From Macrostomum lignano (Eukaryota): DNA of 51,515 bases. Shown piece after piece: positions 11,637 to 51,515 of this stretch; position 1 is the stretch's first letter, and every line of letters starts with the position of its first letter. Location: assembly GCA_002269645.1 (NCBI GenBank), contig NIVC01003241.1, positions 1 through 51,515 on the forward strand. Direction: 5' to 3'. Position numbers and translations under genes: made by a program. Under the pieces are notes generated by a model that saw nothing but the letters and a program-made list of their open reading frames with translations, had not been told where the DNA came from and did not search any database.

Positions 11637-13355
11637 ATGTCGCCCACCTGCGAAACTCCCAACTGCGGCAAGGAGGCCAAATTTCGTTGTCCAACCTGCG
11701 TTAAACTCGGCATTGACGGCTCGTATTTTTGTGCCCAGGATTGTTTTAAGGTGAGGAAATGTAATCGCATTTTATTTGCTTTCTTGTACTTGTAACTGTG
11801 AATTGTTTACATCTGAATCTGTTACTAAAAGACAGGCAGACAGACATACAGACACAGATAGTCAGTCAGTCAGTCAGACAGACAGACAGCCAGGCAGACA
11901 GACATACAGGCACAGAGACAGGCAGACAGACAGACAGGATGGCAGACAGTCAGTCAGACAGACAGACAGACAGACAGGCAGGTAGGCAGAAAGGCAGGCA
12001 GACAGACAAACAGACAGACAGGCAGGGAGGCAGACAGACAGGCAGACAGACACACAGGCAGAAAGACAGACAGACACGCAGGCAGGCAGACAGACAGGCA
12101 GCCAGGCAGACAGACAGGCAGGCAGACAAACAGGCAGACAGACAAACAGACAGACACAGACAGAAAGACAGACAGACACGCAGGCAGGCAGAACGGCAGG
12201 CAAACAGACAGGCAGACAGACACACAGACAGAAAGACAGGCAGACACGCAGGCAGGCAGACAGACAGACAGACAGACACAGACAGATAGGCAGACACACA
12301 GACAGATAGGCAGACACACGGACAGGCGGGAGGCAGACACACAGACAGGCGGGAGGCAGACAGTCAGGCAGGCAGACACACAGACAGAAAGACAGACAGA
12401 CACGCAGGCAGGCAGAAAGGCAGGCAGACAGACAGACAGACAGACACAGACACAGACAGATAGGCAGACACATAGACGGACAGGCAGGCAGACAGACAGA
12501 CAGACAGACAGACAGACACACAGACAGAAAGACAGACAGACACGCAGGCAGGCAGAAAGGCAGGCAGACACAAAGATAAGACAGAAGTAAATGAACAAAT
12601 ATAAATGGCCACTTGCAGGCGAAAATGAGGCGCTTGAATGTGCTCAGGAGTCAGCGAATTGGCAGAATTGCCTCAGCGCTGGTGCTGTGTGACGATGTCG
12701 CCTAAGGCGTTGCATAAGCGCGCCCGCAGCTATCTTCACCTTCTCTCCCTCCGACTATCACTCGCAGGGCTACTGGAAGGACCACAAGAAGGTGCACGCC
12801 CTAGTTGAAAAGCTTCACCCCGGCAGCGCGCTAGCCGCCGACAAGCAGCAGCCGCTGGAGCTGTCCTGGCCTGGCTATCATTTCACTGGCTCGCTGCGGC
12901 CGCACAGGCAGACACCCCGGCGCACCCTGCCTGATTCAATCGTCAGGCCCGACTATTGGAAAGACGGCACACCGTACAGCGAGCGGCAGAGCAAATCAGT
13001 GCTCAGAGTTATTGACGACGATGCCGAACTAGAGGACATGCGAGTAGTCTGCCGTCTGGCTCGTGAAGTTCTCGAAGAAGGCATGCGAGCCGTTGCTCCC
13101 GGTGTCACCACCGACGAGATCGACCGGATTGTGCACGAAGCCTGCATCGAACGGGACTGCTATCCGTCACCTCTGAACTACTACGGCTTCCCGAAATCTT
13201 GCTGTACATCCGTTAACGAAGTGATCTGTCACGGCATACCGGATCTGAGGCCGCTGGTTGAAGGCGATATTGTTAATATTGATGTGACCTGCTATCATCG
13301 GGAGCATCACGGCGACCTCAATGAGACCGTGTTCGTTGGAAAGGTGAGTCAAGTA

Positions 13356-13442
<87 letters not shown>

Positions 13443-14165
13443 ATCTGTCTGCCTGTCTGTCTGTTTGTCCCTTTGTCAGTCAGCTAATCTATCTGCCGGC
13501 TATATCGTATGCATTCCTTCTTCCTTCCGGTATATGATATCGCTGATCTAGACCCCACCGCAGCATGCCTGGTTTATCAAAATAAGTCGAGCTACTTCTA
13601 ATTCTAGATATATAACCAATTCTAAGCGCTATTTATATCTATTTCCAACGCTTTGCCGTACAAGCATCCTGCAGCGATAGTATACATGTAAGTAACGAAT
13701 GCTATATTGCCAAATCTTCAGGTGGACGAGGACAGCAAGCGCCTAGTCCAAGCCGCCTACGATTGCCTACAAAAATCGATCGAAGCCGTCCGACCCGGGG
13801 TAAAATTCCGCGACATGGGCGACATTATCCAGCGTCACGCGCACTCGGCCGGCCTGTCGGTTGTCCGAACCTACTGTGGCCACGGAATCCACCGTCTGTT
13901 CCATTGCGCACCAAATGTGCCGCACTACGCTAAAAACAAAGCCGTAGGCGTGATGAAACCCGGTCACGTGTTCACTATCGAGCCAATGATTAATCTGGGC
14001 GTCTGGCGGGATCAGCTGTGGCAGGACGATTGGACTTCGGTCACCGTTGATGGCAAACGGTCGGCACAGTTTGAGGAGACTCTGTTAGTAACGGAGACCG
14101 GCTGCGATGTGCTCACCCGCCGGCTGGCTGATAATGGGCGACCGTTTTTCATGTCGCAAGTGTGA
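11637..14165 (+). CDS. METAP1: Methionine aminopeptidase 1 (exons 11637-11750, 12768-13343, 13722-14165; 377 aa)
   Basis: N-terminal zinc finger [18 protein letters not shown]|[10 protein letters not shown]; [61 protein letters not shown]. Two phase-0 GT-AG introns. Confidence 0.97.
11830..12575. repeat. (GACA/GGCA)n microsatellite in METAP1 intron 1
   Basis: Direct inspection. Confidence 0.97.
13358..13470. repeat. (GTCT)n microsatellite in METAP1 intron 2
   Basis: Direct inspection. Confidence 0.97.
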
Positions 14166-34210: not shown

Positions 34211-34362
34211 CGGGGCTCAAAAAGTGAAATTGGCGGACACAAGGGTAACTGCCAGATTTCCATACAATGATATTCTTCACTCAACGCTTTCCAGACCAAG
34301 ACACCTGGACAACTTCAGACAGTGCAGCAAAGATAAAGACCAATAACAAAGAGCCAGTCGCT

Positions 34363-36848
34363 ATGCCCAACGTATTTGCCACTGTCGGCACAACTTCTTT
34401 CGACGCTTTAATCCGCCGATTAGATTCTCCGGAATTGCATAAAATCCTCTGCGACCAGCTGGGCTATCACGGCTTAGTTATGCAAATAGGTCGAGGCGAT
34501 TACGAACCTGTAGCTCACACTGCTCGGGATTACCCATTAGAGGGTCGGTTCTCCGTTAGTTACTATCGATTTAAGCCGTCCCTGGCTGCCGATATCGCCG
34601 CCGCAGGATTAGTAATTAGCCACGCCGGAGCTGGCAGCGTGTTGGAGTCATTGAATGCCGGAAAACGTTTACTAGTTGTTGTCAACGACGATTTGATGCA
34701 TAATCATCAAACTGAACTGGCTCACCGGGTTGCTAGGCAAGTAATAAATTCAATTTCCATGTTTTGTAGCTTTGAATTGCAGTGGATTATGACCCCTTCG
34801 AAGACCCCCAACCGCCATAATATATGACCCCAACAATCATAGACTATGACCCCTAGCAGCCATAGACAATGACTCCCAACAGCCATAGACAATTACCCCA
34901 ACAGCCATAGACTCCACTCTGACCCAAATTAGCATAGACTATGACCCACCAACAGCCATAGACTATGACCCCCTAACAGCCATAGACTATGACCCCAAAC
35001 AGCCATAGACTATGACCCCCCAACAGCCATAGACAATTACCTCAATAGCCATAGACTATGACCCCCAACAGCCATAGACTCCACTCTGACCCAAATTAGC
35101 ATAGACTATGACCCACCAACAGCCATAGACTATGACCCCCTAACAGCCATAGACTATGACCCCCAACAGCCATAGACTATGACCCCCCAACAGCCATAGA
35201 CAATTACCTCAATAGCCATAGACTATGACCCCCAACAGCCATAGACTATGACCCCTAAAAGCCATAGACAATTACTCCAGCAGCCATAGACTATGACCCC
35301 AAAAAGCCATAAATCATGACCCAAACAGCCATAGACTATGACCCCCAACAGCCATAGACTATGACCCCTAACAGCCATAGACAATTACTCCTAACAGCCA
35401 TAGACAATTACTCCTAACAGTCATAGACAATGACCCCAACAGCCATAGACTATGACCCCCTAACAGTCATAGACAATTACCCAGCAGCCATAGACTATGA
35501 CCCCTAACAGCTATAGACTATGACCCTTAAAAGCCATAAATCATGACCCAAACAGCCATAGCCATAGGTTATGGCCTCAACAGCCAGACTATGACCACAA
35601 CAGCCATAGACAAATACTATGACCCCAACAGCCATAGACAAATACCCCCAACAGCCATAGATAATTACTCCTAACAGCCATAGACAATTACCCCTAACAG
35701 CCATAGACTATGACCCCCCTAACAGTCATAGACAATTACCCCAACAGCCATAGACTATGACCCCCTAACAGTCATAGACTATGACCCCCAACAGCCATAG
35801 ACAATTACCCCAGCAGCCATAGAGTATGACCCCTAACAGCTATAGACTATGACCCCTAAAAGCCATAAATCATGACCCAAACAGCCATAGGTTATGGCCT
35901 CAACAGCCAGACTATGACCACAACAGCCATAGACAAATACTATGACCCCAACAGCCATAGACAAATACCCCCAACAGCCATAGATAATTACTCCTAACAG
36001 CCATAGACAATTACCCCTAACAGCCATAGACTATGACCCCCCTAACAGTCATAGACAATTACCCCAACAGCCATAGACTATGACCCCCTAACAGCCATAG
36101 ACTATGACCCCTAACAGCTATAGACTATGACCCCTAAAAGCCATAAATCATGACCCAAACAGCCATAGGTTATGGCCTCAACAGCCAGACTATGACCACA
36201 ACAGCCATAGACAAATACCCCCAACAGCCATAGATAATTACTCCTAACAGCCATAAACAATTACCCCTAACAGCCATAGACTATGACCCCCCTAACAGTC
36301 ATAGACAATTACCCCAACAGCCATAGACTATGACCCCCTAACAGTCATAGACTATGACCCCCAACAGCCATAGACAATTACCCCAGCAGCCATAGAGTAT
36401 GACCCCTAACAGCCATAGACTATGACCCCTAACAGCTATAGACTATGACCCCTAAAAGCCATAAATCATGACCCAAACAGCCATAGGTTATGGCCTCAAC
36501 AGCCAGACTATGACCCCAACAGCCATATACAAATACCCCTAACAGCCATAGACAATTACCCCTAACAGCCATAGACAATTAACCCTAACAGCCATAGACA
36601 ATTAACCCTAACAGTCATAGACTATGACCCCTAACAGCCACGCCAACAAATATAATATAAAACTAATAAGTAATTAATGTGTCCCCTGTTCCAGAGACGG
36701 ACACCTGGACACAACGGTATGCGTCGACCTTGAAGACGCCCTTAAACGCCTGACCCCCGTAAGCCAGTTGAAACCGTTTCCTCGAGGCGAACCGGAGAAA
36801 TTCGCCAAATTCCTTGACAGCGTTATGGGATTCGGCGATGGGGATTAG
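34363..36848 (+). CDS. ALG13: UDP-N-acetylglucosamine transferase subunit ALG13, short form (exons 34363-34736 and 36695-36848; 175 aa; GC-AG intron)
   Basis: VFATVGTTSFDALI, VMQIGRG, YRFKPSL..DI..AGLVISHAGAGSVLE.L..GK.LLVVVN..LMHNHQTELA, then exon 2 DGHL..GEPEKFAKFLDSVMG. Confidence 0.95.
34815..36640. repeat. ~22-24-bp minisatellite (ccccaacagccatagactatgac) filling the ALG13 intron
   Basis: Direct tandem copies with higher-order duplications. Confidence 0.97.
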
Positions 36849-37254
36849 ACAGCGTCAGTTATTTTCATTGATAATTCTTTGCATCATTTTTTGCAAAAGT
36901 ACAATATATGTACTTTTAATCAATTAACAGTCGAATTGTAAAAGATCTTCGATCGCGTTGATATAATTTACAGACCAATATTGTACGTGTGTTATACTCG
37001 TAGCAATTTAGTGTATTACAATTACAAACCATTTTTAGTATATGGAAGTTAGCTCTCTTAAGTTAATAAGTTTCAATAAATACAAGTGCTGAGTTTTTCT
37101 GCTTGCGGCATTGTTGTCTTCTAAAAGATGCAAGATTTTGCTGCTTTAAAATTTCTTTTTCTAGTTTAAAAAACTCAAATTGTTAGCCTGAATTATTAAA
37201 TAGATTTCTGTATGACTAAATCGGGTTTGATTTAGTTCTCAAGTCTAGTTTCAG

Positions 37255-38165
37255 CCTCTACTTCAGGCTAGATTCAGGGTCTAGTTCAGGCTAGATTCAG
37301 GGTCTACTTCAGGCTAGATTCAGGGTCTAGTTCAGGCTAGATTCAGGGTCTACTTCAGGCTAGATTCAGGTAATACTTCAGGCTAGATTCAGGGTCTAGT
37401 TCAGGCTAGATTCAGGGTCTACTTCAGGCTAGATTCAGGTAATACTTCAGGCTAGATTCAGGGTCTACTTCAGGCTAGATTCAGGGTCTACTTCAGGCTA
37501 GATTCAGGGTCTACTTCAGGCTAGATTCAGGGTCTACTTCAGGCTAGATTCAGGGTCTAGTTCAGGCTAGATTCAGGGTCTACTTCAGGCTAGATTCAGG
37601 GTCTACTTCAGGCTAGATTCAGGGTCTACTTCAGGCTAGATTCAGGGTCTAGTTCAGGCTAGATTCAGGGTCTAGTTCAGGCTAGATTCAGGGTCTACTT
37701 CAGGCTAGATTCAGGGTCTACTTCAGGCTAGATTCAGGGTCTACTTCAGGCTAGATTCAGGGTCTAGTTCAGGCTAGTTTCAGGGTCTAGTTTAGGCTAG
37801 ATTCAGGGTCTACTTCAGGCTAGATTCAGGTCTACTTCAGGCTAGATTCAGGGTCTACTTCAGGCTATATTCTGGGTCTACTTCAGGCTAGATTCAGGGT
37901 CTACTTCAGGCTAGATTCAGGGTCTACTTCAGGCTAGATTCAGGGTCTACTTCAGGCTAGATTCAGGGTCTACTTCAGGCTAGATTCAGGGTCTACTTCA
38001 GGCTAGATTCAGGGTCTAGTTCAGGCTAGATTCAGGGTCTACTTCAGGCTAGATTCAGGGTCTAGTTCAGGCTAGATTCAGGGTCTACTTTAGGCTAGAT
38101 TCAGGGTCTACTTCAGGCTAGATTCAGGTAATACTTCAGAATAGATTCAGGGTCTACTTCAGGAA
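37255..38165. repeat. 23-bp minisatellite (ttcaggctagattcagggtctac), ~39 copies
   Basis: Highly homogeneous tandem copies. Confidence 0.97.
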
Positions 38166-38279
38166 AGATTTGATTTAGGCTTCAGAATAAATGGTTCAAT
38201 TTAAATTCATTCAGTACTTGTTGTTACACCAACCTTAGCTACAATCGCACATTCATCCATCATTGCATGCTAATAAGCC

Positions 38280-41200
38280 ATGTCTCTAAGCGAATACGAA
38301 CAGCGTCGTCTGAAAAATCTCGCCGAAAATCGGCGCATTCTTGGCGAACTCGGCGCTTTAAATTCGCCACCGAAACGATGGACAAAGCCTTCGATTTCTA
38401 AGCTGCCAACGGCTGCGGCGTCTAAGAAGCGGCAGTCTTTGATCTCTAATAATAAGAATCGCCGACAGTCTAACAAGCCGAAACCTGTCAGCCGATCATC
38501 TGATGCAGCCGGCGAGCCCGAAGCTGTCCAGGACGCCGATTCCGACGCCGTTTTAGCTCGCCGTTTGGCGGCTGAACTCGACGAAGCGCCCAGGCGGTCG
38601 AGTCGCAGGCTTGAGGGCCGGCCGGCGCCGCAGTACATTGGCCAGTGCGACGGCTACGGCAAAGACGACAGCGGCGAGGAGAACTGGGTGCCGTCGTCGG
38701 GTCGGCGCGGTCGCGGCTCTGACGACGATGATGATGAGTACGACAGCAAAGATGAGGACAGCGATGGCGAGGGCGGTGAGTAGTAGATGGAAGGCTGCTG
38801 AGGTGTCTTACATGCTATCTATTTGTGTGATTTTTAGCTAGTTTAGGCCTAGCTCGTATTTAGTGTGAATCTTACGGTGGGCGCTGTGCGTCTTGCAGTG
38901 GACTGGACTGAATCTTATACATGTGACTTAAAGTGAATATTTTAGTGACCTAGTGTGAATCTTATAGATCTGTAACCTAGTGTGAATCTTATAGATTTGT
39001 GACCTAGTGTGAATCTTATAGATTTGTGACCTAGTGTGAATCTTAGATTTGTGACCTAGTGTAAATCTTATATAATGATTTAGTTTGATTCTTATACTGA
39101 AATTAGGTGTGAATCTTATAGATGTGTGACCAGGTGTGAATCTTTTAGTGTGACCAGGTGTGAATCTTATAGTGTGACAAGGTTTGAATCTTATAGATGT
39201 GTGACCAGGTGTGAATCTTATAGTGTGACCAGGTTTGAATCTTATAGATGTGTGACCAGGTGTGAATCTTATAGTGTGACCAGGTGTGAATCTCACAAAT
39301 GTGTGACCAGGTGTGAATCTTATAGTGTGACCAGGTGTAAATCTCACAGATGTGTGACCAGGTGTGAATCTCACAAATGTGTGACCAGGTGTGAATCTAC
39401 AGTGTATGGACCAGTTTTGAATCGTTAAATTACACAGGTGTGAATCCTTCGCTAGTACAATAGTCTCTTTAATCCGCTGTCTCAACCCCCCCCCTCCGGC
39501 CCCCAGGCGGCAGTCGCCGAGCCCGCCGAGCAGCCGCTGCCAGCGGTAGCAGTGTATTCGACCGACCCAAGGTGGCCAAAAACCGGCCGAACATCTACGG
39601 CGCCATAGCCGGCGTTGCCGTGGGCACCCTGTTCGAGACTCGAATTGACGCCTGCCTAGCGGGACTGCACCGGCCAACGGTGGCCGGCATCCACGGCGGC
39701 ACGGACGGGGCCTACTCGATCGCCCTGTCCGGTGGCTACGAGGACGACATCGATCTGGGCAGCCATTTCACCTACACTGGCGAGGGCGGTCGCGATTTGA
39801 AAGGCACCAAATCGAATCCGAAAAATCTGCGCACAGCGCCGCAGACTAAGGATCAAGCTTTGAGCAGGAATAATGCCGCCCTGGTGCGCTCGGCCGAGAA
39901 TGGACAGTCTGTCCGAGTTATTCGGGGTTATAAGTTGCGCAGCGAGTTTGCCCCGCCTGAAGGCTATTATAGGTGAGGAATTATCCCGCCTGCTTGATTC
40001 TTCCCAGTTCCCAACTACATGATTTTATCTTTATCCCCAATTATCCCAACTATATGGTTCTTCCCATTATGCCCAATTATCCCAGCTACATGATGATTCT
40101 TTCCATAATCCTCATTCCCCAATTATCTTAACTGCTTGATTTTTCCCATTATCGCCAATTATCCCAGCTACATGATTTTTCCCATTATCCCCAATTATCC
40201 CAGCTACATGATTTTTCCCATTATCCCCAATTATCCCAGCTACATGATTTTTCCCATTATCCCCAATTATCCCAGCTACATGATTCTTCCCATTATCGCC
40301 AATTATCCCAGCTACATGATTCTTCCCATTATCGCCAATTATCCCAGCTACATGATTTTTCCCATTATCGCCAATTATCCCAGCTACATGATTCTTCCCA
40401 TTATCGCCAATTATCCCAGCTACATGATGATTCTTTCCATAATCCTCATTGCCCAATTATCTTAACTGCTTGATTCTTCCCATTATCGCCAATTATCCCA
40501 GCTACATGATTTTTCCCATTATCGCCAATTATCCCAGCTACATGATTTTTCCCATTATCCCCAATTATCCTAGCTACATGATTTTTCCCATTATCGCCAA
40601 TTATCCCAGCTACATGATTTTTCCCATTATCCCCAATTATCCCAGCTACATGATTTTTCCCATTATCCCCAATTATCCCAGCTACATGATTTTTCCCATT
40701 ATCGCCAATTATCCCAACTACATTGTTCTTTCCATTATGCCCAATTATCCCAACTATATGATTTTTCCCATTATTCCCAATTTATCCCAACTACATTATC
40801 CTTCCCGTATCTCCCCAATTATCCCATCATATTAGTTTCCCTTTCTTAACAATACATGTAAAGTATCTCATGAATGAGCAGAGCATTATTAAATCCCAAA
40901 TCGCAGATACGACGGTCTCTACAGAGTAGAGAAATGGTGGTACACCACCGGCATGGCGGGTTTCGGCGTCTACAAGTTTGCGTTCAAGCGCCTGCCAGAT
41001 CAGGCGCCGGCGCCATGGGAAGAAGCTGCGGCCGAACCGGTTGTGTACAACTTCCGGACAGACTATCGACCCGTAGAGGAGGAACCATCAGCTGCTGTCG
41101 CCACCGATGCCGACGAAAACACGGCTGTACCCCCAACCGATAATAATGCTACTACTAATAGTAGCTGCGTCCAAGAAGAGGAATCGTCAAAGAAAACTGA

Positions 41201-42650
41201 CGAGAAACGACGGGGTCGTAAAAAGAAATCGACAAGTAAAACAAATGACGCCGGATTGGCGGTCCCTGGCGGGGCTCCAGTTGAATTGGACTACGAAGCC
41301 GTGTTGTCCGGCCAGATTGACGTTGGCGGCGGGACTGCCGACTGCGAGGCTGATGGAAAGAAAAAATCCGGACAGAATGGTAAAATTATGAGGATTACGT
41401 CAGTTGGTCAGTGATAGTAGTAGCAGTTCACTGCAATTGCATAACAATTGGTTACCTAGCAGCATAGCAACAGGTTACCAAGCTGCATAGCAACGGGTTA
41501 CCTAGTTGCATAGCAACTGTTTACATAACTGCATAGCAACAGGTTACCAAGCTGCATAGCAACAGGTTACCAAGCTGCATAGCAACAGGTTACCAAGCGG
41601 CATAGCAACAGGTTACCAAGCGGCATAGCAACAGGTTACCAAGCTACATAGCAACGGGTTATCAAGCTGCATAGCAACTGTTTACATAACTGCTTAGAAA
41701 CAGGTTACCAAGCTGCATAGCAACGGGTTACCTAGTTGCATAGCAACTGTTTACATAACTGCATAGCAACAGGTTACCAAGCTGCATAGCAACAGGTTAC
41801 CAAGCTGCATAGCAACAGGTTACCAAGCGGCATAGCAACAGGTTACCAAGCTGCATAGCAACAGGTTACCAAGCTGCATAGCAACAGGTTACCAAGCGGC
41901 ATAGCAACAGGTTACCAAGCGGCATAGCAACAGGTTACCAAGCTACATAGCAACGGGTTATCAAGCTGCATAGCAACTGTTTACATAACTGCTTAGAAAC
42001 AAGTTACCAAGCGGCATAGCAACAGGTTACCAAGCTGCATAGCAACAGGTTACCAAGCGGCATAGCAACAGGTTACCAAGCTGCATAGCAACGGTTTACC
42101 TAGTTGCATAGCAATGGCTTTCCTAGTTGCATAGCAACGGGTTACCTAGTTGCATAGAAACGTTTTATCAAGCCGCATAGCAACTGTTTGCATAGCTGCA
42201 TAGCAACTGGTTACCCAGCAGCATAGAAATACCAATCAGGCAATACTGATCAGGTTCTTACACGCATAGCAACTTTAAAATTTAATTCAAGATCCCAACA
42301 ACGATCTCGAGCCGCCCGCCACCGCTGCCGCTGATGGCATCGCCGAGAAGAAGCGTCGCGGAGGTCGCAAATCGAAGGCAGCAGCAACAGCAGCAGTTCC
42401 CACAGAACCGTTGCCAAGCCAAGATTCAACTAGCAACGAGAAGAAGCTTGATGTAGAAAATGTGGATCCAATCACGATCTCTGCTGCTGCTGCAGATCAG
42501 CCAAATAAGAGACGCGGTCGAAAGTCGAAGTCTGTTGTTGAGGCTGCTTTTGTGGCTCCGCCGCCCCCGCCGCCTCCTCCTCCTCCACTAGAAGAAGCAG
42601 AATTCGTGTCTCCACCGAGGAAGCGATCGCGTTTCTACTTTGAAGATTAG
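38280..42650 (+). CDS. Stand-alone SRA/YDG domain protein with N-terminal CDCA7/WDR76-like helix (exons 38280-38775, 39507-39972, 40907-41379, 42292-42650; 597 aa)
   Basis: SRA: YGAIAGVAVGTLF..GLHRPTVAGIHG..GAYSIALSGGYEDDIDLG..FTYTGEGG..NNAAL..VRVIRG..YR|YDGLYRVEKWW..YKFAFKRL. Intron phases 1,2,1 give a continuous 1794-nt ORF. No UBL, Tudor, PHD, RING or SET domain is visible. Confidence 0.9.
38865..39440. repeat. 24-27-bp minisatellite (gtgtgaatcttatagtgtgaccag), SRA gene intron 1
   Basis: Direct tandem copies. Confidence 0.9.
39985..40835. repeat. 36-bp minisatellite (ttcccattatcgccaattatcccagctacatgattt), SRA gene intron 2
   Basis: Direct tandem copies. Confidence 0.95.
41440..42235. repeat. 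23-bp minisatellite (gcatagcaacaggttaccaagct), SRA gene intron 3
   Basis: Direct tandem copies. Confidence 0.95.
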
Positions 42651-42919: not shown

Positions 42920-44060
42920 AAAGGGGCTGTTACCGTGTTTTTTACCGTTACGGTCACCAGTTACCATTTTTTACCGTATTTGTGACTGTTTAGTTCAGGG
43001 TCACCATGTGACTGTTCAATGTTACCGTACTTTGTGACCATTTTGTTTAGGGTCACATGTTACCGATCAATGTGACCGTATTTTGTGACCGTTTTGTTTA
43101 GGGTCACATGTTACCGATCAATGTGACCGTATTTTGTGACCGGTTTGCTTAGGGTAACCATGTGACTGTTCATAGTTACCGTATTTTGTGACCGTTTTGT
43201 TTAGGGTCACATGTTACCGATCAATGTGACCGTATTTTGTGACCGGTTTGCTTAGGGTAACCATGTGACTGTTCATAGTTACCGTATTTTGTGACCGTTT
43301 TGTTTAGGGTCACATGTTACCGATCAATGTGACCGTATTTTGTGACCGTTTTGTTTAGGGTCACATGTTACCGATCAATGTGACCGTATTTTGTGACCGG
43401 TTTGCTTAGGGTAACCATGTGACTGTTTATAGTTACCGTATTTTGTGACCGTTTTGTTTAGGGTCACATGTTACCGATCAATGTGACCGTATTTTGTGAC
43501 CGTTTTGTTTAGGGTCACATGTTACCGATCAATGTGACCGTATTTTGTGACCGTTTTGTTTAGGGTCACATGTTACCGATCAATGTGACCGTATTTTGTG
43601 ACCGTTTTGTTTAGGGTCACATGTTACCGATCAATGTGACCGTATTTTTTGACCGTTTTGTTTAGGGTCACATGTTACCGATCAATGTGACCGTATTTTT
43701 TGACCGTTTTGTTTAGGGTCACATGTTACCGATCAATGTGACCGTATTTTGTGACCGTTTTGTTTAGGGTCACATGTTACCGATCAATGTGACCGTATTT
43801 TGTGACCGTTTTGTTTAGGGTCACACGTTACCGTTCAATGTGACCGTATTTTGTGACCGTTTTGTTTAGGGTCACATGTTACCGATCAATGTGACCGTAT
43901 TTTGTGACCGTTTTGTTTAGGGTCACACGTTACCGATCAATGTGACCGTATTTTGTGACCGTTTGTTCAGGGTCACGTGTTACCGATCAATGTGACCGTA
44001 TTTTGTGACCGTTTGTTCAGGGTCACATGTTACCGTTCACTGTTACCGTATTTTGTGACC
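42920..44060. repeat. Left subterminal array, 51-bp unit (gtgaccgtattttgtgaccgttttgtttagggtcacatgttaccgatcaat), ~21 copies
   Basis: Period 51 (e.g. 43501 and 43552). Confidence 0.95.
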
Positions 44061-44448
44061 GTTTTGTTCTGTTGTGGAGTTTACTACTTGTCGCTTTCTA
44101 CCAACTGTTGTCGTCTTCATTGCATAATAGACTGCTACTACGTTGCTAAATTTGAGTGCGGCGTGACGCACGTGTTATTGTTGCCTGAATTTTTACTTTA
44201 CAATTTTACAGAGTAGCCTCTCCTGAAATAGGTCACATGGATACCCAGTTATATATAGTTAGGTATGGACACGTGATAGTTATGAATAGGGAAGCAAATT
44301 TATTACCTATGCCCAGGGATCCGTTCTCTTTCAAATCAGTATATAAGGAGAAGTGACGGTAACCCACGAAGCAACTGACTAATTTCTCATGAACGTTTGC
44401 CACTTTTGCAGAGGATAAGAATCATTATTAAGAACAAAAATCTCTATC

Positions 44449-47418
44449 ATGGAAGCCCAGCAACGCCGCGCCATTATGACTCGTTTAAGAGTGAAACGAT
44501 TTCGAGAACGCAAGACAGTGCAGCTTCTATTTCAAAGGCGACAACAGTGGTTACAATCTGGAACGACTGCAATGGGCGCCGCCATTGGAAATCCACAGAC
44601 GAATCGTGGTAATAAGCGCCGTCATCCAGACGACGACATCGGTAGCGAAGGTACTCCACAACCGCCATCTACCGGCGAAGGTACTCCACAACCGCCATCT
44701 ACCGGCGAAGCTACTTCACAACCGCCATCTACCGGCGAAGCTACTTCACAACCGCCATCTACCGGCGAAGCTACTTCACAACCGCCATCTACCGGCGAAG
44801 CTACTTCACAACCGCCATCTACCGGCGAAGCTACTTCACAACCGCCATCTACCGGCGAAGCCTCCACCAGCGAAACTGCCAGTGAAGCTGGCGATGCCAG
44901 CGAAGCTGCCGAAAGCTCTGCCAGCGAAACTGCCAGTGAAGCCGGCGATGCCAGTGAAGCTACCGAAAGCTCTGCCAGCGAAACTGCCAGTGAAGCCGGC
45001 GATGCCAGCGAAGCTACCGAAAGCTCTGCCAGCGAAACTGCTAGTGAAGCCGGCGATGCCAGCGAAGCTACCGAAAGCTCTGCCAGCCAAGCGCCTAGCG
45101 ACGATGCCGAATACAGCGATGACGGTGACGGCGATGATTATGATTCAGACGACGCTAAACTGCGTAACTTTTGCCAGTTGGTCGCCTATCCTGGCGCTAC
45201 TGTGTCATACGCTGCAATTGGAACCCTAGCTCAGTGTCTGGCCTTTGCGCAAAATCTTTCTGTACATGGTGTCGACAAATTGCTTGCCTACACAAAGGCC
45301 GTGCTTCCTGTAAATGCTGCGTTTCCACAGACCCGTCATATGCTGGACAATTTGCTAAACCTGACACCGTACTCCTACACGAGATGCAGACCTTCAGTGT
45401 ATTGTCTGAGCTGCGATCGCGAGATGCAACAACCGCGCCCAAATCACTGTCCGCATTGTAATGCTAGATTGGAATCGCCAGAGTCTGTTGGGCACTTCTG
45501 GCGAATGGATATAGGCAGCCAAGTACGACAGATGATCGAAGAATGCCATCTTCTAGACCACGTAATATATCCCGTCGATCAGCCGGCGAACGTGGGACGT
45601 CTTTACATGGGTAGCGGAACTGCGTATGCGGCATTCAAGCGGTCTATTGCACTGGGCTCACGAAGTGACCTCACGTATTCAGTGTGCATCGATGGCTTTC
45701 CAATTTTTAAAAGGTCTGTTATGGAAATGTGTCCAGTTTATGTCAGCATTAACGAAGTAACCGACAACATGAAGAGTAGATATGTCGTTGTAGCCGGCTT
45801 CTGGTCCGCTAAAAGGAAACTACGCTCCACTGCGTATCTCCCTTGGCTAGTAGAGCAACTGAATGCACTGCGGTCAGTTGGTATTGAATTCATGAAAGGT
45901 GCCGGTGTCGATGGCAAACAGGGTGGAAGAATTAGACTGCACCCACTAATGTTTATTCTAGACGCTCCGCAACGGGCAGAAACCAAATGCATGCGTCAGT
46001 TTAATGCCGAGTACGGGTGCGACAATTGCTACACTATCTCCCTGCACGACGCAGAACGTGGGGGCAGTGCGAGAATATATCCATGCGCAATGTCGGATGA
46101 TGCGATGCATGCAGCTCTGGCTGCCAATGTCACGCAGCCAACAGTTCGCAATCTGGCTGACACCGTGATGCTGGCAAACACTAAACCGGTATCAGCGGAG
46201 CACAACCTGGGAGTCATAGCGGTATCGCCACTTTATCGGCTTGAGGGCTTTGACTACATTCAAGGTTGTCCACCATGTTTCCTGCATCAATTGCTGACTG
46301 GTCTTGTCCGACGCACTATGGAGCAGTTATTTGTGCCAATTGGCAAGAAGCCCATGAGAGTGTGTCCCGCACCGGATTTGTCCAGACGACTTTCAGATAT
46401 TAACACTAGGCTGGCGACTATCCACGTGCCGGCGTCGCATCAGCGGGCCCCGCGCACGATGCATGAGCTAGGGCACTTCCGTGGGCACGAGCTCGAAGCG
46501 TGGCTACTTTGTTACGGACCAATGGTGCTAGGGGATGGCCTGCTTGATGCCAGTTACTACCAGCACTTTATGCTTCTGTCGTCTGCTATTTTCTGGCTTT
46601 GTCTCGATGGCGCACCGCACACGCAGATATTGCGAGCTGACGCTAACCTGAAGCACTTTTATAAAGAGCTGCGCAACCTTTTCGGAGCAGCCGCACAGAC
46701 GTATAATGCTCACCAGGTATGTGAGCATTTTAGTGCGTATGCTCTACTGCTAGGACCGCTGCATCGGGTATCAGCCGGACTTTTCGAGTCTATGCATGGT
46801 CGCTTGCGCTCGCGAGTTCACGGTACGCGACACTCAGACAAACAGTTGGTAAAGCAGCTAACTCGACGTGCGGCGACTCGTTATCTCAGCTCACTATTGG
46901 GTGTCAGAGACATTTTCAATAGCTCCAACCCAAAGGCGACAGATAGACCGGCATTGACAACCGCCGGTGGAGTGCGGCTGTACGAGCGCCGACAGGGACG
47001 TGGCTTCACGAGGGCTGTACTTCACAGTGGATGCCAGCTGGAGGTTTTTCGACCTGAGTTGCAATTCTGCAGATCTGCGTCCTGCTTCATCGCATTTAAT
47101 TGCGGCGCGACATTATTTGAGTTCGGTCGAGTGGAGTCGATTCGCGTTGCAGATGGCACTGCAAAATTGGTTGTTCGTCGTTTATTGACCGAGAAGTACT
47201 TGGAGCCACGCGATAATCCACTTTACTGCTTCTCTGGGCGTCGCCTACTTGGCGGTTGTGCGCTTGCGCACGTGCGTCGATTGCGACGAAGCCCTTTCGA
47301 CGAGGTGTCCAAGTTCTACTTCGAATTGGACCCGGTTGCCACCATCGTCAAATCTTGTGCCGTGTCGGACTCTCACGTGGCGTTTCTGCCACATGAACAA
47401 TTTTCCTTCGCAGCATAG
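44449..47418 (+). CDS. CACTA/EnSpm-type (CMC) transposase, 989 aa, intronless
   Basis: CLSC..CPHC; IDGFPIFK..CPVYVSINE; LDAPQRA..QFNAEYGCDNC; PCFLHQLLTG; FRGHELEAWLL.YGP; YNAHQV.EH; LGPLHRVSAGLFESMHG. These match the animal EnSpm motif series (DG / DxxAR..CxxC / [DC]xxH / HxxxH / FE). Confidence 0.9.
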   Translation: MEAQQRRAIMTRLRVKRFRERKTVQLLFQRRQQWLQSGTTAMGAAIGNPQTNRGNKRRHPDDDIGSEGTPQPPSTGEGTPQPPSTGEATSQPPSTGEATSQPPSTGEATSQPPSTGEATSQPPSTGEATSQPPSTGEASTSETASEAGDASEAAESSASETASEAGDASEATESSASETASEAGDASEATESSASETASEAGDASEATESSASQAPSDDAEYSDDGDGDDYDSDDAKLRNFCQLVAYPGATVSYAAIGTLAQCLAFAQNLSVHGVDKLLAYTKAVLPVNAAFPQTRHMLDNLLNLTPYSYTRCRPSVYCLSCDREMQQPRPNHCPHCNARLESPESVGHFWRMDIGSQVRQMIEECHLLDHVIYPVDQPANVGRLYMGSGTAYAAFKRSIALGSRSDLTYSVCIDGFPIFKRSVMEMCPVYVSINEVTDNMKSRYVVVAGFWSAKRKLRSTAYLPWLVEQLNALRSVGIEFMKGAGVDGKQGGRIRLHPLMFILDAPQRAETKCMRQFNAEYGCDNCYTISLHDAERGGSARIYPCAMSDDAMHAALAANVTQPTVRNLADTVMLANTKPVSAEHNLGVIAVSPLYRLEGFDYIQGCPPCFLHQLLTGLVRRTMEQLFVPIGKKPMRVCPAPDLSRRLSDINTRLATIHVPASHQRAPRTMHELGHFRGHELEAWLLCYGPMVLGDGLLDASYYQHFMLLSSAIFWLCLDGAPHTQILRADANLKHFYKELRNLFGAAAQTYNAHQVCEHFSAYALLLGPLHRVSAGLFESMHGRLRSRVHGTRHSDKQLVKQLTRRAATRYLSSLLGVRDIFNSSNPKATDRPALTTAGGVRLYERRQGRGFTRAVLHSGCQLEVFRPELQFCRSASCFIAFNCGATLFEFGRVESIRVADGTAKLVVRRLLTEKYLEPRDNPLYCFSGRRLLGGCALAHVRRLRRSPFDEVSKFYFELDPVATIVKSCAVSDSHVAFLPHEQFSFAA

Positions 47419-49501: not shown

Positions 49502-50572
49502 ATGGCGGATGCAGACTCGCTAGATAGAATAATGCGGTCTGCAAGCATATTAAAAGATAATGTCACACATATTCTGAAAAATATTGATAGCAGCTGTTCA
49601 GTCATCTGTATGCTGCAGGAGCTGCCGCTGCAACAATCGGATCGCAAAGCGACTCTCTGCGACCTGCAAGATTGCTTCCATGGCCTGCATGGCGAACTGG
49701 CCCTGGTTGCTATGCAGGCTAGTGACATAAGCAAGCGATTGCTGCAATTGGACCACCCGGTGCCATCAGCTGGTCTAGCCGGCGCAGAAGCAAGTTCGGC
49801 AGCCCGATCACCCGATGATATTCAACGGGCCATTAAATTTTCCATTGCGCAACTGCCACCTGCGCAGCTGCCATCCGGCGCAGAACGTGCAGTGGACTGT
49901 GCACCCGCGAAGCCGCCATCCGGCGCAGAACGTGCAGTGGACTCAGACTGTGCACCCGCGAAGCCGCCATCCGGCGCAGCAAATAGTGCGGCATCGGTTT
50001 GTCCATCGTGTGCACCACTGTGCGCCAATGGCTTTAACTGGCCAGCAGCCTGGATCGACATGGCGTCAGACAAAGCTGCAGAAAAAGCTGTGGTGGTCGA
50101 CGTGCTGCAGCGAGTGGCCAAGCAGCTACCGGCACGGGCCGAGAGCCCAGCAAGATACACCGCTGCCGCATTGTCATCACGACAATGATTGCGTACCTGG
50201 CGCAACAAAGATCAAAAGGCGCCAGCCATGGTGACACGCCCGCTGAGGCGCAAAAGGCAATGGCCAACTGCCTGCGCATGATGTGCGATCGATATGTCCA
50301 AACTGTACTGGAGTCCGGCGAGGCGGTGCAACGGTCCGCCAACGGGCCGCCGGTCGCCGTAGTGTACGGCAAAGCAAAAGTATGCCGCCGTGTTTAAGCG
50401 CACTGGATTCTGTATTGCGCGAAAACTACAAAAATCGCTCAAATTGGCACCCAGCGGAAATGAGGTGGCGACGATCGACATCGATGCCGATGATGAGGAC
50501 GCCAACGTTGGCGACAACGGAGATCACAATGACGACGAAGCTGCAGCCTCTCATCCATCTGCAAATCCATGA
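49502..50572 (+). pseudogene. Probable CACTA accessory ORF2, split into three overlapping frames (49502-50188, 50185-50397, 50390-50572)
   Basis: GC-rich coding-like sequence inside the element; adjacent ORFs overlap by 4-8 nt, consistent with two single-base frameshifts. No family recognised. Confidence 0.5.
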
Positions 50573-51139: not shown

Positions 51140-51515
51140 AAGATCACAAAAACGGTCACAAAATATTGGTAACAGTAAACAGTAACATAGTTACCCTAAG
51201 CAAAACGGTCACAAAATACGGTAACATTAAACGGTAACATGTGACCCTGAACAAACGGTCACAAAATACGGTCACATTGAACGGTCACATGTGACCCTGA
51301 ACAAACGGTCACAAAATACGGTCACATTGACGGTCACATGTGACCCTAACAAACGGTCACAAAATACGGTCACTTGAACGGTCACATGTGACCCTAACAA
51401 ACGGTCACAAAATACCGGTAACATTGAACGGTCACATGTGACCTAAACAAACGGTCACAAAATACGGTAACATTGAACGGTAACATGTGACCCTGGACAA
51501 ACGGTCACAAAATAC
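51140..51515. repeat. Right subterminal array (~50-bp unit), reverse complement of the left array
   Basis: attgaacggtcacatgtgaccctgaacaaacggtcacaaaatacggtcac is close to the reverse complement of the 51-bp left unit. Confidence 0.95.

What the first reader, a model, noticed from the sequence alone, without database searches (positions are those of the whole stretch)
38280..42650. SRA methyl-C reader fused to a CDCA7/WDR76-type helix: candidate alternative HELLS adaptor
Seen: the spliced 597-aa protein starts LSEYEQRRLKNLAENRRILGEL, followed by disordered acidic/basic sequence, a complete SRA domain and a basic/Pro-rich tail, with none of the other UHRF1 domains (UBL, TTD, PHD, RING). Established, recalled from memory: the pattern R..N[IL].[EQ]N...L..L is the helix in CDCA7 proteins reported to bind and activate the remodeller HELLS/DDM1, and a similar helix occurs at the N-terminus of WDR76/Cmr1 (WDR76 is a reported HELLS partner). 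CDCA7 couples this helix to a hemimethyl-CpG-sensing zf-4CXXC_R1 domain, and SRA also reads methylated C. Inference: this may be a convergent CDCA7 analogue in which SRA replaces the zinc finger, recruiting HELLS to methylated DNA independently of UHRF1's ubiquitin ligase. The helix also occurs in unrelated proteins, so function is unproven.
Basis: partly seen in the sequence, partly recalled or inferred. Interest (0 to 1): 0.85.

Follow-up and report, generated by a model that had tools for sequence, protein, structure and literature searches.

The report
SRA methyl-DNA reader with remodeller-docking helix
This flatworm gene encodes a methylated-DNA reader (SRA domain) that has no ubiquitin-ligase parts and instead carries a short conserved helix shared with two known partners of the chromatin remodeller HELLS, so it may be a third, unrecognised way of bringing that remodeller to methylated DNA.

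Summary
Four GT-AG exons (38280-38775, 39507-39972, 40907-41379, 42292-42650, + strand) give a 597-aa protein. It has an N-terminal helix, a disordered linker, a complete SRA domain (Pfam E=5.7e-47) and a basic/Pro-rich tail. No UBL, TTD, PHD or RING domain is present. The organism is Macrostomum lignano.

The architecture is not a one-off. About 80 of the 150 best SRA relatives carry the same helix (YExxRxxNIxxNxxLLxxLGL), mostly at the N-terminus. They come from flatworm, hemichordate, molluscs, nemertean, crustaceans, cnidarian, nematode and several fungal phyla.

The helix profile aligns ungapped and in register with three known helices:
- Cmr1/WDR76: hhalign 97%, E=1.7e-11.
- CDCA7, inside its mapped HELLS-binding helix: hhalign 88%, E=3.5e-6.

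So this is a shared portable module rather than convergence, and it is closest to WDR76/Cmr1.

A published table lists M. lignano with DNMT1, DNMT3, HELLS and 5mC, but with CDCA7 not detected. Daphnia and Cryptococcus show the same pattern.

HELLS binding itself is untested here. The adaptor idea is plausible (about 0.45), not shown.

The parts
38280..38775 (+). Exon 1 (aa 1-165 plus 1 nt): start codon, N-terminal helix, basic linker, RRSxR motif, acidic run
   Evidence: Splice enumeration. Two in-frame stops lie upstream of the ATG.
38286..38357 (+). Conserved N-terminal helix motif, aa 3-26 LSEYEQRRLKNLAENRRILGELGA (AF2 helix aa 5-23)
   Evidence: AF2 pLDDT 86-91. Y6, E7, R10, N13, N17, L21 and L24 are at least 90% conserved in the family. 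The motif matches the Cmr1/WDR76 and CDCA7 helices.
38592..38612 (+). RRSSRRL, the family-wide RRSxR motif (aa 105-111)
   Evidence: R106, S108 and R110 are at least 90% conserved in the 55-sequence alignment. The motif is found in about 60 of 71 family linkers and in WDR76 (CRRSMRL) and Cmr1 (TRRSRRL).
38776..39506 (+). Intron 1 (731 nt), mostly a 27-nt minisatellite (38945-39398)
39507..39972 (+). Exon 2 (aa 166-321): N-terminal two thirds of the SRA domain (from nt 39596). It holds the thumb (HRPTVAG), the pocket (SGGYEDD, FTYTGEGG) and the finger loop (NPKNLRTAPQ).
   Evidence: Pfam SAD_SRA. Residue mapping.
39973..40906 (+). Intron 2 (934 nt), mostly a 36-nt minisatellite (40009-40826)
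40907..41379 (+). Exon 3 (aa 321-479): YDG strand and end of the SRA domain (to nt 41003), acidic stretch, first KRRGRKKK patch (41205-41228)
41380..42291 (+). Intron 3 (912 nt), mostly a 23-nt minisatellite (41438-42226)
42292..42650 (+). Exon 4 (aa 479-597 plus stop): basic patches KKRRGGRKSK (42348-42377) and KRRGRKSK (42507-42530), Pro10 (42558-42587), TAG stop
   Evidence: The same exon 3/4 join is used in UniProt A0A1I8GDG6.

Best explanation
The gene is the Macrostomum lignano member of an old, uncharacterised opisthokont family of 'SRA-only' proteins. These are annotated 'YDG domain-containing' or 'UHRF1-like', and the Cryptococcus Uhf1 lineage belongs here.

Shown: the protein has an intact, UHRF1-type base-flipping SRA domain. 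It also has a conserved N-terminal module made of one amphipathic helix (YExxRxxNIxxNxxLLxxLGL) and an RRSxR motif. This module is shared with WDR76/Cmr1, and its helix is shared with the HELLS-binding helix of CDCA7.

Inferred mechanism:
- The SRA domain binds methylated, probably hemimethylated, CpG by flipping out 5mC.
- The N-terminal helix docks on the N-terminal coiled coil of the SNF2 remodeller HELLS/LSH, as the CDCA7 helix does.
- The RRSxR motif and the basic patches hold the protein on nucleosomes or DNA.

The protein would then bring, and perhaps activate, HELLS at methylated DNA without any ubiquitin-ligase activity. In a species where CDCA7 was not detected, it could be the main HELLS adaptor for methylation maintenance.
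For: SRA domain. Pfam E=5.7e-47. UHRF1 SRA is the best PDB sequence match and fold match. The positions that in UHRF1 form the thumb (V446, G448), the 5mC pocket (Y466, D469, Y478, T479) and the finger (N489, R491) are conserved in the query (V224, G226, Y243, D246, Y255, T256, N272, R274) and across 55 family members. The UHRF1 roles are from established structures (2zkd, 3clz).

Family. Of the 150 best of 3227 SRA hits, about 80 carry the helix, nearly always at the N-terminus. Taxa include Ptychodera, Mytilus, Lineus, Amphibalanus, Daphnia, Nymphon, Xenia, Plectus, Macrosteles, chytrids, Glomeromycotina, Basidiomycota including Kwoniella, and Ascomycota.

Helix similarity. The helix HMM scores 19.5 bits on Cmr1 residues 4-28, 13-17 bits on WDR76 around residues 161-189, and 11.1 bits on human CDCA7 residues 118-132. 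All alignments are ungapped and in one register, and 0 of 3000 shuffles reach any of these scores. hhalign gives 97.3% (E=1.7e-11) against WDR76/Cmr1 and 87.6% (E=3.5e-6) against CDCA7. Six of the seven near-invariant family positions are kept in CDCA7 (F114, R118, N121, N125, L129, L132).

Literature. The CDCA7 helix is necessary for HELLS binding (PMC11417364, PMC11343034). WDR76/Cmr1 co-purifies with HELLS, MUS-30 and Irc5 in human, Neurospora and yeast (PMC4714748, bioRxiv 10.1101/650028). Recombinant Cryptococcus Uhf1 (SRA-only) binds hemimethylated DNA selectively (bioRxiv 10.1101/149385).

Species context. The supplementary table of PMC10538959 lists M. lignano with DNMT1, DNMT3, UHRF1, HELLS and 5mC 'Y*', and CDCA7 as ND. 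Daphnia pulex and Cryptococcus neoformans show the same pattern.
Against: - No binding was measured or modelled.
- The helix is short. A profile search of the PDB shows that chance partial matches reach 16 bits. The 11-bit CDCA7 match therefore counts only as a targeted test whose position coincides with the mapped helix.
- Two family hallmarks, E7 and the terminal LGL, are absent from CDCA7. They are present in WDR76/Cmr1, whose HELLS-binding region has never been mapped and whose HELLS association is salt-labile (10.1101/650028).
- The family coexists with CDCA7 in molluscs, cnidarians and hemipterans, so it is not a simple substitute.
- Cryptococcus uhf1 deletion alone barely changes 5mC (10.1101/149385).
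- Position S481 of UHRF1 is Glu in the query, and the finger loop is 6 residues longer, so the methylation-state preference may differ.
Confidence: 0.45

Rival explanations
1. The protein is a methyl-DNA reader, but the N-terminal helix plus RRSxR is a general chromatin module, not a HELLS-docking peptide. It would bind histones, the nucleosome acidic patch, or another partner shared with WDR76/Cmr1. The protein would then act like Cryptococcus Uhf1, as an accessory that marks hemimethylated DNA for the DNA methyltransferase.
For: - The module is closest to WDR76/Cmr1. The WDR76 N-terminal half (1-310) carries its histone, SIRT1, GAN, Ku and PARP1 associations (10.1101/650028).
- RRSxR is near-invariant. 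From memory, it resembles the HMGN nucleosome-binding core RRSARLSA, which contacts the acidic patch.
- Uhf1 acts in parallel with H3K9me to support Dnmt5 (10.1101/149385).
Against: - The one experimentally mapped function of a helix of this type, in CDCA7, is HELLS binding.
- Both other families that carry the helix are HELLS partners in several organisms (PMC11343034, PMC4714748).
- A helix with buried-type conserved Asn residues on one face looks more like a helix-helix docking surface than a histone-tail or DNA contact.
Confidence: 0.3
2. The helix recruits a ubiquitin ligase, for example DDB1-CUL4 as in the DCAF protein WDR76. The family would then be a functional analogue of UHRF1 (SRA plus E3) built from different parts.
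For: WDR76 is described as a CUL4-DDB1 substrate receptor, and DDB1 co-purifies with it (PMC11331135, 10.1101/650028). Short N-terminal helices anchor DCAFs and viral hijackers to DDB1 (established knowledge of the H-box).
Against: - By inspection, the conserved positions (Y6, E7, R10, N13, N17) are not H-box features.
- The spacing of the hydrophobic residues before the LGL end does not fit the HBx/DDB2 H-box.
- CDCA7, which shares the helix, is not known as a DDB1 binder.
- In WDR76 the helix lies about 130 residues upstream of the propeller, unlike typical H-boxes.
Confidence: 0.08
3. The helix is itself a DNA-binding or self-association element, STPR-like or a leucine zipper, that only strengthens DNA binding by the SRA domain.
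For: The first half of the motif weakly resembles the STPR DNA-binding repeat of FMBP-1 (MSAYAAQRLAN; 13.7 bits, E=0.29 against the PDB). The CDCA7 helix was historically annotated as a leucine zipper (PMC10538959).
Against: The STPR match is at chance level and covers only 11 residues. Pfam reports no STPR hit. The helix occurs as a single copy, whereas STPR works as tandem repeats.
Confidence: 0.07
4. The gene model is wrong or the locus is a decaying copy, with exon 1 not spliced to the SRA exons in vivo.
For: M. lignano carries several copies, including a frameshift-ridden one (A0A1I8FCX8). The UniProt model of the 98% copy uses a different exon 1/2 join. No RNA data were available.
Against: All four exons are open with canonical GT-AG sites. 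The helix-linker-SRA order and the RRSxR motif match orthologues from many phyla. The start is fixed by upstream stop codons and by orthologues that begin at the same motif.
Confidence: 0.04

Closest known systems
Cryptococcus neoformans Uhf1 (CNAG_00677), the SRA-only 'Uhrf1-like' protein
   Same: It is an SRA domain protein without Tudor or RING. Its close relatives in Kwoniella and Cutaneotrichosporon carry the same N-terminal helix and fall within the same family. The recombinant protein binds hemimethylated CpG selectively, and it supports maintenance methylation in parallel with H3K9me (10.1101/149385). Cryptococcus is also listed as HELLS+, CDCA7 ND.
   Different: The Uhf1 sequence itself was not retrieved here, so its helix is inferred from sister genera. 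It works with Dnmt5 rather than DNMT1. No link to HELLS, and no function for its N-terminus, has been described in the papers searched. The M. lignano protein adds a long basic/Pro-rich tail.
CDCA7 / CDCA7L (HELLS activator; HLBH helix plus zf-4CXXC_R1)
   Same: It has a short helix upstream of a methyl-CpG-sensing DNA-binding domain, followed by a basic stretch. The helix aligns in register (hhalign 87.6%), with F/Y, R, N, N, L and L conserved.
   Different: The DNA reader is an SRA domain (base flipping, blocked inside the nucleosome core according to PMC11343034) and not the zinc finger, which reads the major groove on nucleosomes. No zf-4CXXC_R1 domain is present. E7 and the terminal LGL of the helix are absent from CDCA7. 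HELLS binding is untested.
WDR76 / yeast Cmr1 / Neurospora WDR76 (partner of HELLS/MUS-30/Irc5)
   Same: The N-terminal module is shared. The helix gives hhalign 97.3%, E=1.7e-11, for example LSEYEQRRLKNLAEN against LSPYERKRLKNISEN, and it is followed by RRSxRL.
   Different: The C-terminal effector is a WD40 propeller linked to DNA damage and CUL4-DDB1, not an SRA domain. In vertebrate WDR76 the helix is internal (around residue 165), whereas in Cmr1 and the SRA family it is at the very N-terminus.
UHRF1 / UHRF2 (and plant VIM/ORTH)
   Same: It is the closest SRA domain by sequence and fold (about 42-45% identity), with the same flipping residues.
   Different: UBL, tandem Tudor, PHD and RING are absent. 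The protein therefore cannot ubiquitylate H3 or PAF15 to recruit DNMT1. It is annotated 'UHRF1-like' in some databases only because of the SRA domain.

Membership tests
SAD/SRA (YDG) domain proteins | Match to Pfam PF02182 above the gathering score | tested here: met
   159.6 bits against a cut-off of 30.7; residues 196-353 cover profile positions 2-148 of 148.
SAD/SRA (YDG) domain proteins | SRA fold | tested here: met
   AF2 pLDDT >90 over residues 190-360. Foldseek top hits are UHRF1 SRA-DNA complexes, E~1e-17, TM(target) 0.70-0.76.
SAD/SRA (YDG) domain proteins | Base-flipping and 5mC-pocket residues (UHRF1 V446, G448, Y466, D469, Y478, N489, R491) | tested here: met
   All are conserved in the query and in at least 53 of 55 family members, except Y478, which is Y or F. 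S481 is Glu in the query, and K490 is Leu.
SAD/SRA (YDG) domain proteins | Binding of methylated or hemimethylated DNA | not testable with these tools
   This needs EMSA or a structure. It has been shown only for a probable family relative, Cryptococcus Uhf1 (10.1101/149385).
UHRF1 E3 ligases | UBL, tandem Tudor, PHD and RING domains around the SRA domain | tested here: not met
   Pfam at E<=10 finds SAD_SRA only. AF2 shows no other folded domain in residues 1-380. The tail (381-597) is low complexity.
CDCA7 family | zf-4CXXC_R1 zinc finger (PF10497) | tested here: not met
   No hit. The protein has only 3 cysteines.
CDCA7 family | HELLS-binding helix (HLBH) | tested here: inconclusive
   The profile match falls exactly on human CDCA7 118-132 (11.1 bits, 0 of 3000 shuffles; hhalign 87.6%). 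The score is below what chance gives in a database-wide search.
CDCA7 family | Binds and activates HELLS | not testable with these tools
   No multimer prediction or HELLS sequence of the species was available.
WDR76/Cmr1 | C-terminal seven-bladed WD40 propeller | tested here: not met
   No WD40 hit.
WDR76/Cmr1 | N-terminal helix plus RRSxRL module | tested here: met
   hhalign 97.3%, E=1.7e-11 over 30 columns. RRSxR is present in all three.
Helix+SRA ('Uhf1-like', YDG domain-containing) family proposed here | N-terminal YExxRxxNIxxNxxLLxxLGL helix, RRSxR in the linker, and a C-terminal SRA domain with the NPKNLRTAPQ finger loop | tested here: met
   The query has all three. The family alignment of 55 sequences shows these as the only conserved blocks.

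The most novel reading that the evidence does not exclude
One short helix is a portable docking peptide for HELLS/LSH-type remodellers. Evolution has attached it to three different sensors of DNA state: the CDCA7 zinc finger (hemi-mCpG on nucleosomes), the WDR76/Cmr1 propeller (damaged chromatin) and this SRA domain (flipped 5mC). In lineages that keep HELLS and DNA methyltransferases but have no detectable CDCA7 (Macrostomum, Daphnia, Cryptococcus), the helix+SRA protein would be the HELLS adaptor that sustains maintenance methylation. That would explain these exceptions to the reported CDCA7-HELLS-DNMT co-evolution.
Probability: 0.3. Interest if true: 0.85.

Novelty: new variant of a known kind. 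Interest (0 to 1): 0.7.

Why it matters
HELLS/LSH/DDM1 is the remodeller needed for DNA methylation in compact chromatin. Vertebrate HELLS is inactive without an adaptor, and CDCA7 is the only adaptor with a mapped interface.

If the helix shared by CDCA7, WDR76/Cmr1 and this SRA family is a common HELLS-docking peptide, three things follow:
- It defines a recognisable motif for finding further HELLS clients.
- It gives a molecular basis for the conserved but unexplained WDR76-HELLS association.
- It offers a candidate for how species with HELLS and DNMT1 but no CDCA7 target the remodeller.

It would also give a function to a widespread family that databases label 'UHRF1-like' although it cannot be an E3 ligase. 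The prediction can be tested with a few point mutants.

Tried and rejected
- The search for homologous proteins with the full protein and with residues 1-375 timed out. Residues 1-60 alone found no candidate. A 50-sequence helix profile returned only two short unnamed proteins, because E-values are computed for 5.8 billion sequences.
- Real CDCA7, WDR76 and Cmr1 sequences were therefore obtained with a chimeric query written from memory. It proved 100% identical to human CDCA7 and S. cerevisiae Cmr1. Only mammalian and Saccharomyces sequences were returned, so the CDCA7 and WDR76 profiles are shallow.
- A PDB search with residues 1-72 found nothing. The PDB profile search found only chance-level partial hits.
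- Pfam has no model covering the helix.
- 'Convergent analogue of CDCA7' was considered and set aside in favour of a shared module, because three families align without gaps in one register.
- The DDB1 H-box was considered and judged a poor fit by inspection.
- Reading the basic KRRGRK patches as canonical AT-hooks was rejected, because they lack the GRP core.
- Whether the table entry 'UHRF1 PAA75535' for M. lignano is a canonical UHRF1 or this SRA-only protein could not be determined. Colour coding is lost in the text copy.


Full report
**Observation**

The region 38280-42650 holds a four-exon gene on the + strand. I enumerated all GT donors and AG acceptors near the suspected boundaries and kept combinations that give an open frame. 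One model has exactly 597 aa and retains the YDG motif: exons 38280-38775, 39507-39972, 40907-41379 and 42292-42650. The donor and acceptor sequences are canonical. Two in-frame stop codons lie directly upstream of the ATG.

The product begins MSLSEYEQRRLKNLAENRRILGEL. Pfam reports a single domain, SAD_SRA, at residues 196-353 (159.6 bits, E=5.7e-47). It reports nothing resembling UBL, Tudor, PHD or RING, even at E<=10. The nearest solved structures by sequence are UHRF1 and UHRF2 SRA domains (E~1e-37 to 1e-33), followed by plant SUVH proteins.

An AlphaFold2 model built on a 55-sequence family alignment shows three regions:
- a confident helix at residues 5-23 (pLDDT 86-91);
- a disordered stretch up to about residue 185;
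- an SRA fold at 190-360 (pLDDT mostly >90).

Foldseek places the model on UHRF1 SRA-DNA complexes (E~1e-17). The tail carries three KRRGRK-type basic patches and a run of ten prolines.

**Organism and copies**

A 98%-identical protein in the public collection is UniProt A0A1I8GDG6, 'YDG domain-containing protein', from the flatworm Macrostomum lignano. That model joins exon 1 to the SRA exons but uses another frame at the start of exon 2 and skips the first SRA strands. The model given here keeps those conserved strands, so it is better supported by homology. A third, frameshift-ridden copy also exists (A0A1I8FCX8).

**The architecture is an old family**

phmmer of the 597-aa protein against 1.84 billion representative proteins gave 3227 hits. 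Among the best 150, about 80 carry the same helix, nearly always at the very N-terminus. Most of the rest are fragments that start inside the SRA domain.

Named members come from these groups:
- Animals: Ptychodera (hemichordate), Mytilus, Lineus (nemertean), Amphibalanus, Daphnia, Nymphon, Macrosteles (leafhopper), Xenia (soft coral) and Plectus (nematode).
- Fungi: chytrids (Geranomyces, Rhizophlyctis, Nowakowskiella), Geosiphon, Basidiomycota (Somion, Pleurotus, Cylindrobasidium, Melanopsichium, Cutaneotrichosporon, Kwoniella) and Ascomycota (Saitoella, Tuber, Peziza).

The helix consensus is YExQRxxNIxxNxxLLxSLGL. N17 is invariant, and Y6, E7, R10, N13, L21 and L24 are at least 90% conserved.

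A full-length alignment shows only three conserved blocks:
- the helix;
- a motif RRSxR in the linker (query RRSSRRL, aa 105-111; R106, S108 and R110 at least 90% conserved);
- the SRA domain, with a family-specific finger loop NPKNLRTAPQS.DQ.

**SRA function**

The residues that in UHRF1 form the minor-groove thumb, the 5mC pocket and the Asn/Arg finger are known from the 2008 SRA-DNA structures. They are conserved in the query and across the family. Two differences stand out: UHRF1 S481 is Glu in the query, and the finger loop is six residues longer. Base-flipping recognition of methylated cytosine is thus the expected activity, but the exact preference is open.

The only characterised protein of this kind, Cryptococcus Uhf1, binds hemimethylated DNA selectively (10.1101/149385). 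Its relatives in the sister genus Kwoniella carry the helix.

**The helix compared with CDCA7 and WDR76**

To test the resemblance rather than recall it, I retrieved real sequences with a chimeric query. Human CDCA7 and S. cerevisiae Cmr1 came back at 100% identity, together with many mammalian WDR76 proteins.

A profile of the helix from 50 helix+SRA proteins gave these best matches:

| Protein | Residues matched | Score |
|---|---|---|
| S. cerevisiae Cmr1 | 4-28 | 19.5 bits |
| Mammalian WDR76 | about 161-189 | 13-17 bits |
| Human CDCA7 | 118-132 | 11.1 bits |

None of 3000 shuffles of each protein reaches the observed score. All three alignments are ungapped and share one register. Profile-profile comparison gives 97.3% probability (E=1.7e-11, 30 columns) for WDR76/Cmr1 and 87.6% (E=3.5e-6, 19 columns) for CDCA7.

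The CDCA7 match lies inside the region shown to be needed for HELLS binding. In human CDCA7 this is residues 108-143 (PMC11417364). Deleting the equivalent helix of Xenopus CDCA7e abolishes the interaction; that helix is named HLBH and is predicted to pack on HELLS CC2 (PMC11343034).

One caution applies. A profile search of all PDB sequences shows that chance partial matches reach 16 bits. The CDCA7 score therefore has weight only as a targeted test, together with the positional coincidence.

WDR76 and Cmr1 also carry RRSxRL downstream of the helix. The whole N-terminal module of the SRA family is thus the WDR76/Cmr1 module. I read this as a shared mobile module, not convergence.

**Link to HELLS**

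Two unrelated families with this helix are HELLS partners. The evidence for CDCA7 is direct mapping. The evidence for WDR76/Cmr1 is co-purification in three organisms:
- Neurospora MUS-30 and WDR76 co-purify reciprocally and interact genetically.
- Yeast Cmr1 proteomics found Irc5.
- Human WDR76 and HELLS co-purify reciprocally, though the association is salt-labile.

The binding region in WDR76 has not been mapped. The inference that the helix is the common docking element is therefore reasonable but unproven.

**Species context**

The supplementary table of Funabiki and colleagues (PMC10538959) lists the following for M. lignano:
- DNMT1: PAA75726
- DNMT3: PAA85768
- DNMT2: present
- UHRF1: PAA75535
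- HELLS: PAA85898
- 5mC: 'Y*'
- CDCA7 and all other zf-4CXXC_R1 classes: ND

A second paper states that 5mC is present at low levels and that DNMT1 and DNMT3 are conserved in this species (PMC11292947). Daphnia pulex (DNMT1, DNMT3, HELLS, 5mC; CDCA7 ND) and Cryptococcus neoformans (DNMT5, SRA-only UHRF1, HELLS; CDCA7 ND) show the same pattern, and both lineages have helix+SRA proteins.

Molluscs, cnidarians and hemipterans have CDCA7 as well as the helix+SRA family. The family is therefore not merely a replacement.

Blastocladiomycetes are listed as DNMT1+, UHRF1+, HELLS ND. Whether their SRA proteins keep the helix would be a sharp test, but I could not fetch them.

**Best reading and rivals**

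Most likely (about 0.45) the protein reads methylated DNA with its SRA domain and uses the N-terminal helix to dock on HELLS. RRSxR and the basic patches would then act as nucleosome or DNA anchors. The resemblance of RRSxR to the HMGN acidic-patch motif RRSARLSA is from memory and was not tested.

Rivals:
- The module is a general chromatin or partner-binding element unrelated to HELLS (0.3).
- It recruits DDB1-CUL4, as might be expected from WDR76 being a DCAF (0.08). By inspection the motif does not fit the H-box.
- It is a DNA-binding or zipper helix (0.07). The STPR similarity is at chance level.
- The gene model or locus is not functional (0.04).

**Novelty**

Full-text searches found no paper that links WDR76 and CDCA7 through a shared helix, or that describes an SRA protein with such a helix. 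The gene family is present in databases only as 'YDG domain-containing' or 'UHRF1-like'. I class the finding as a new variant of a known kind: an adaptor for a methylation-linked remodeller, with a different DNA-reading head.

**Limits**

- No HELLS sequence of the species was available.
- No multimer prediction was possible.
- No transcript data were consulted.
- The profiles for CDCA7 and WDR76 are shallow.
- Taxon labels were obtained for only 30 of the 150 relatives.

Noticed in passing
window 37245-38170, 38945-39398, 40009-40826, 41438-42226: The 5' flank and each of the three introns of the SRA gene are filled by their own, unrelated minisatellites (units of 23, 27, 36 and 23 nt, 18-40 copies). 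The whole window is unusually rich in such arrays: 46 TRF rows with score of at least 200.
   Followed up: partly
window 42973-44068 and 51150-51515, enclosing 44449-47418 and 49502-50188: A 51-nt tandem array and its reverse complement (arms up to 130 nt, 96% complementary) flank about 7 kb. That stretch holds a 989-aa ORF with an acidic repeat region and no significant Pfam hit, plus a 228-aa ORF. It looks like a large DNA transposon with inverted subterminal repeat arrays. The right end runs off the window.
   Followed up: partly
window 1-2161: Remnant of an LTR-retrotransposon pol gene (integrase core rve E=4.6e-17, weak Integrase_H2C2) with broken frames.
   Followed up: partly
window 12792-14165 and 34267-34827: Neighbouring host genes: a methionine-aminopeptidase-type Peptidase_M24 gene, split by an intron that runs into a (CTGT)n-like array, and an ALG13-like Glyco_tran_28_C gene upstream of the SRA gene.
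   Followed up: partly
P0001 and P0012 (M. lignano UniProt A0A1I8GDG6, A0A1I8FCX8): M. lignano has at least two further copies of this gene. One is 98% identical, and its public model skips the first SRA strands. The other is strongly degraded, with frameshift-like changes, and reads as if it had no introns. It is annotated 'PEHE domain-containing'.
   Followed up: partly
P0035, P0041, P0072, P0079, P0112 (Agaricomycetes): In mushroom-forming fungi the helix+SRA unit sits at the C-terminus of longer proteins that carry DUF7923 (E down to 1e-61) and CCCH zinc fingers upstream. This is a further architecture of the same module.
   Followed up: partly
window 38592-38612 (aa 105-111) and relatives: The near-invariant RRSxR(L) motif between the helix and the SRA domain also occurs after the helix in WDR76 (CRRSMRL) and Cmr1 (TRRSRRL). 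It resembles the HMGN nucleosome-binding core, so it may be an acidic-patch arginine anchor.
   Followed up: partly
Supplementary table of PMC10538959: Melanopsichium (Ustilaginaceae) has a helix+SRA protein, although its relative Ustilago maydis is listed with no DNA methyltransferase and no UHRF1 but with HELLS. If this holds, the family can persist without 5mC, which would argue for a role beyond methylation reading.
   Followed up: no
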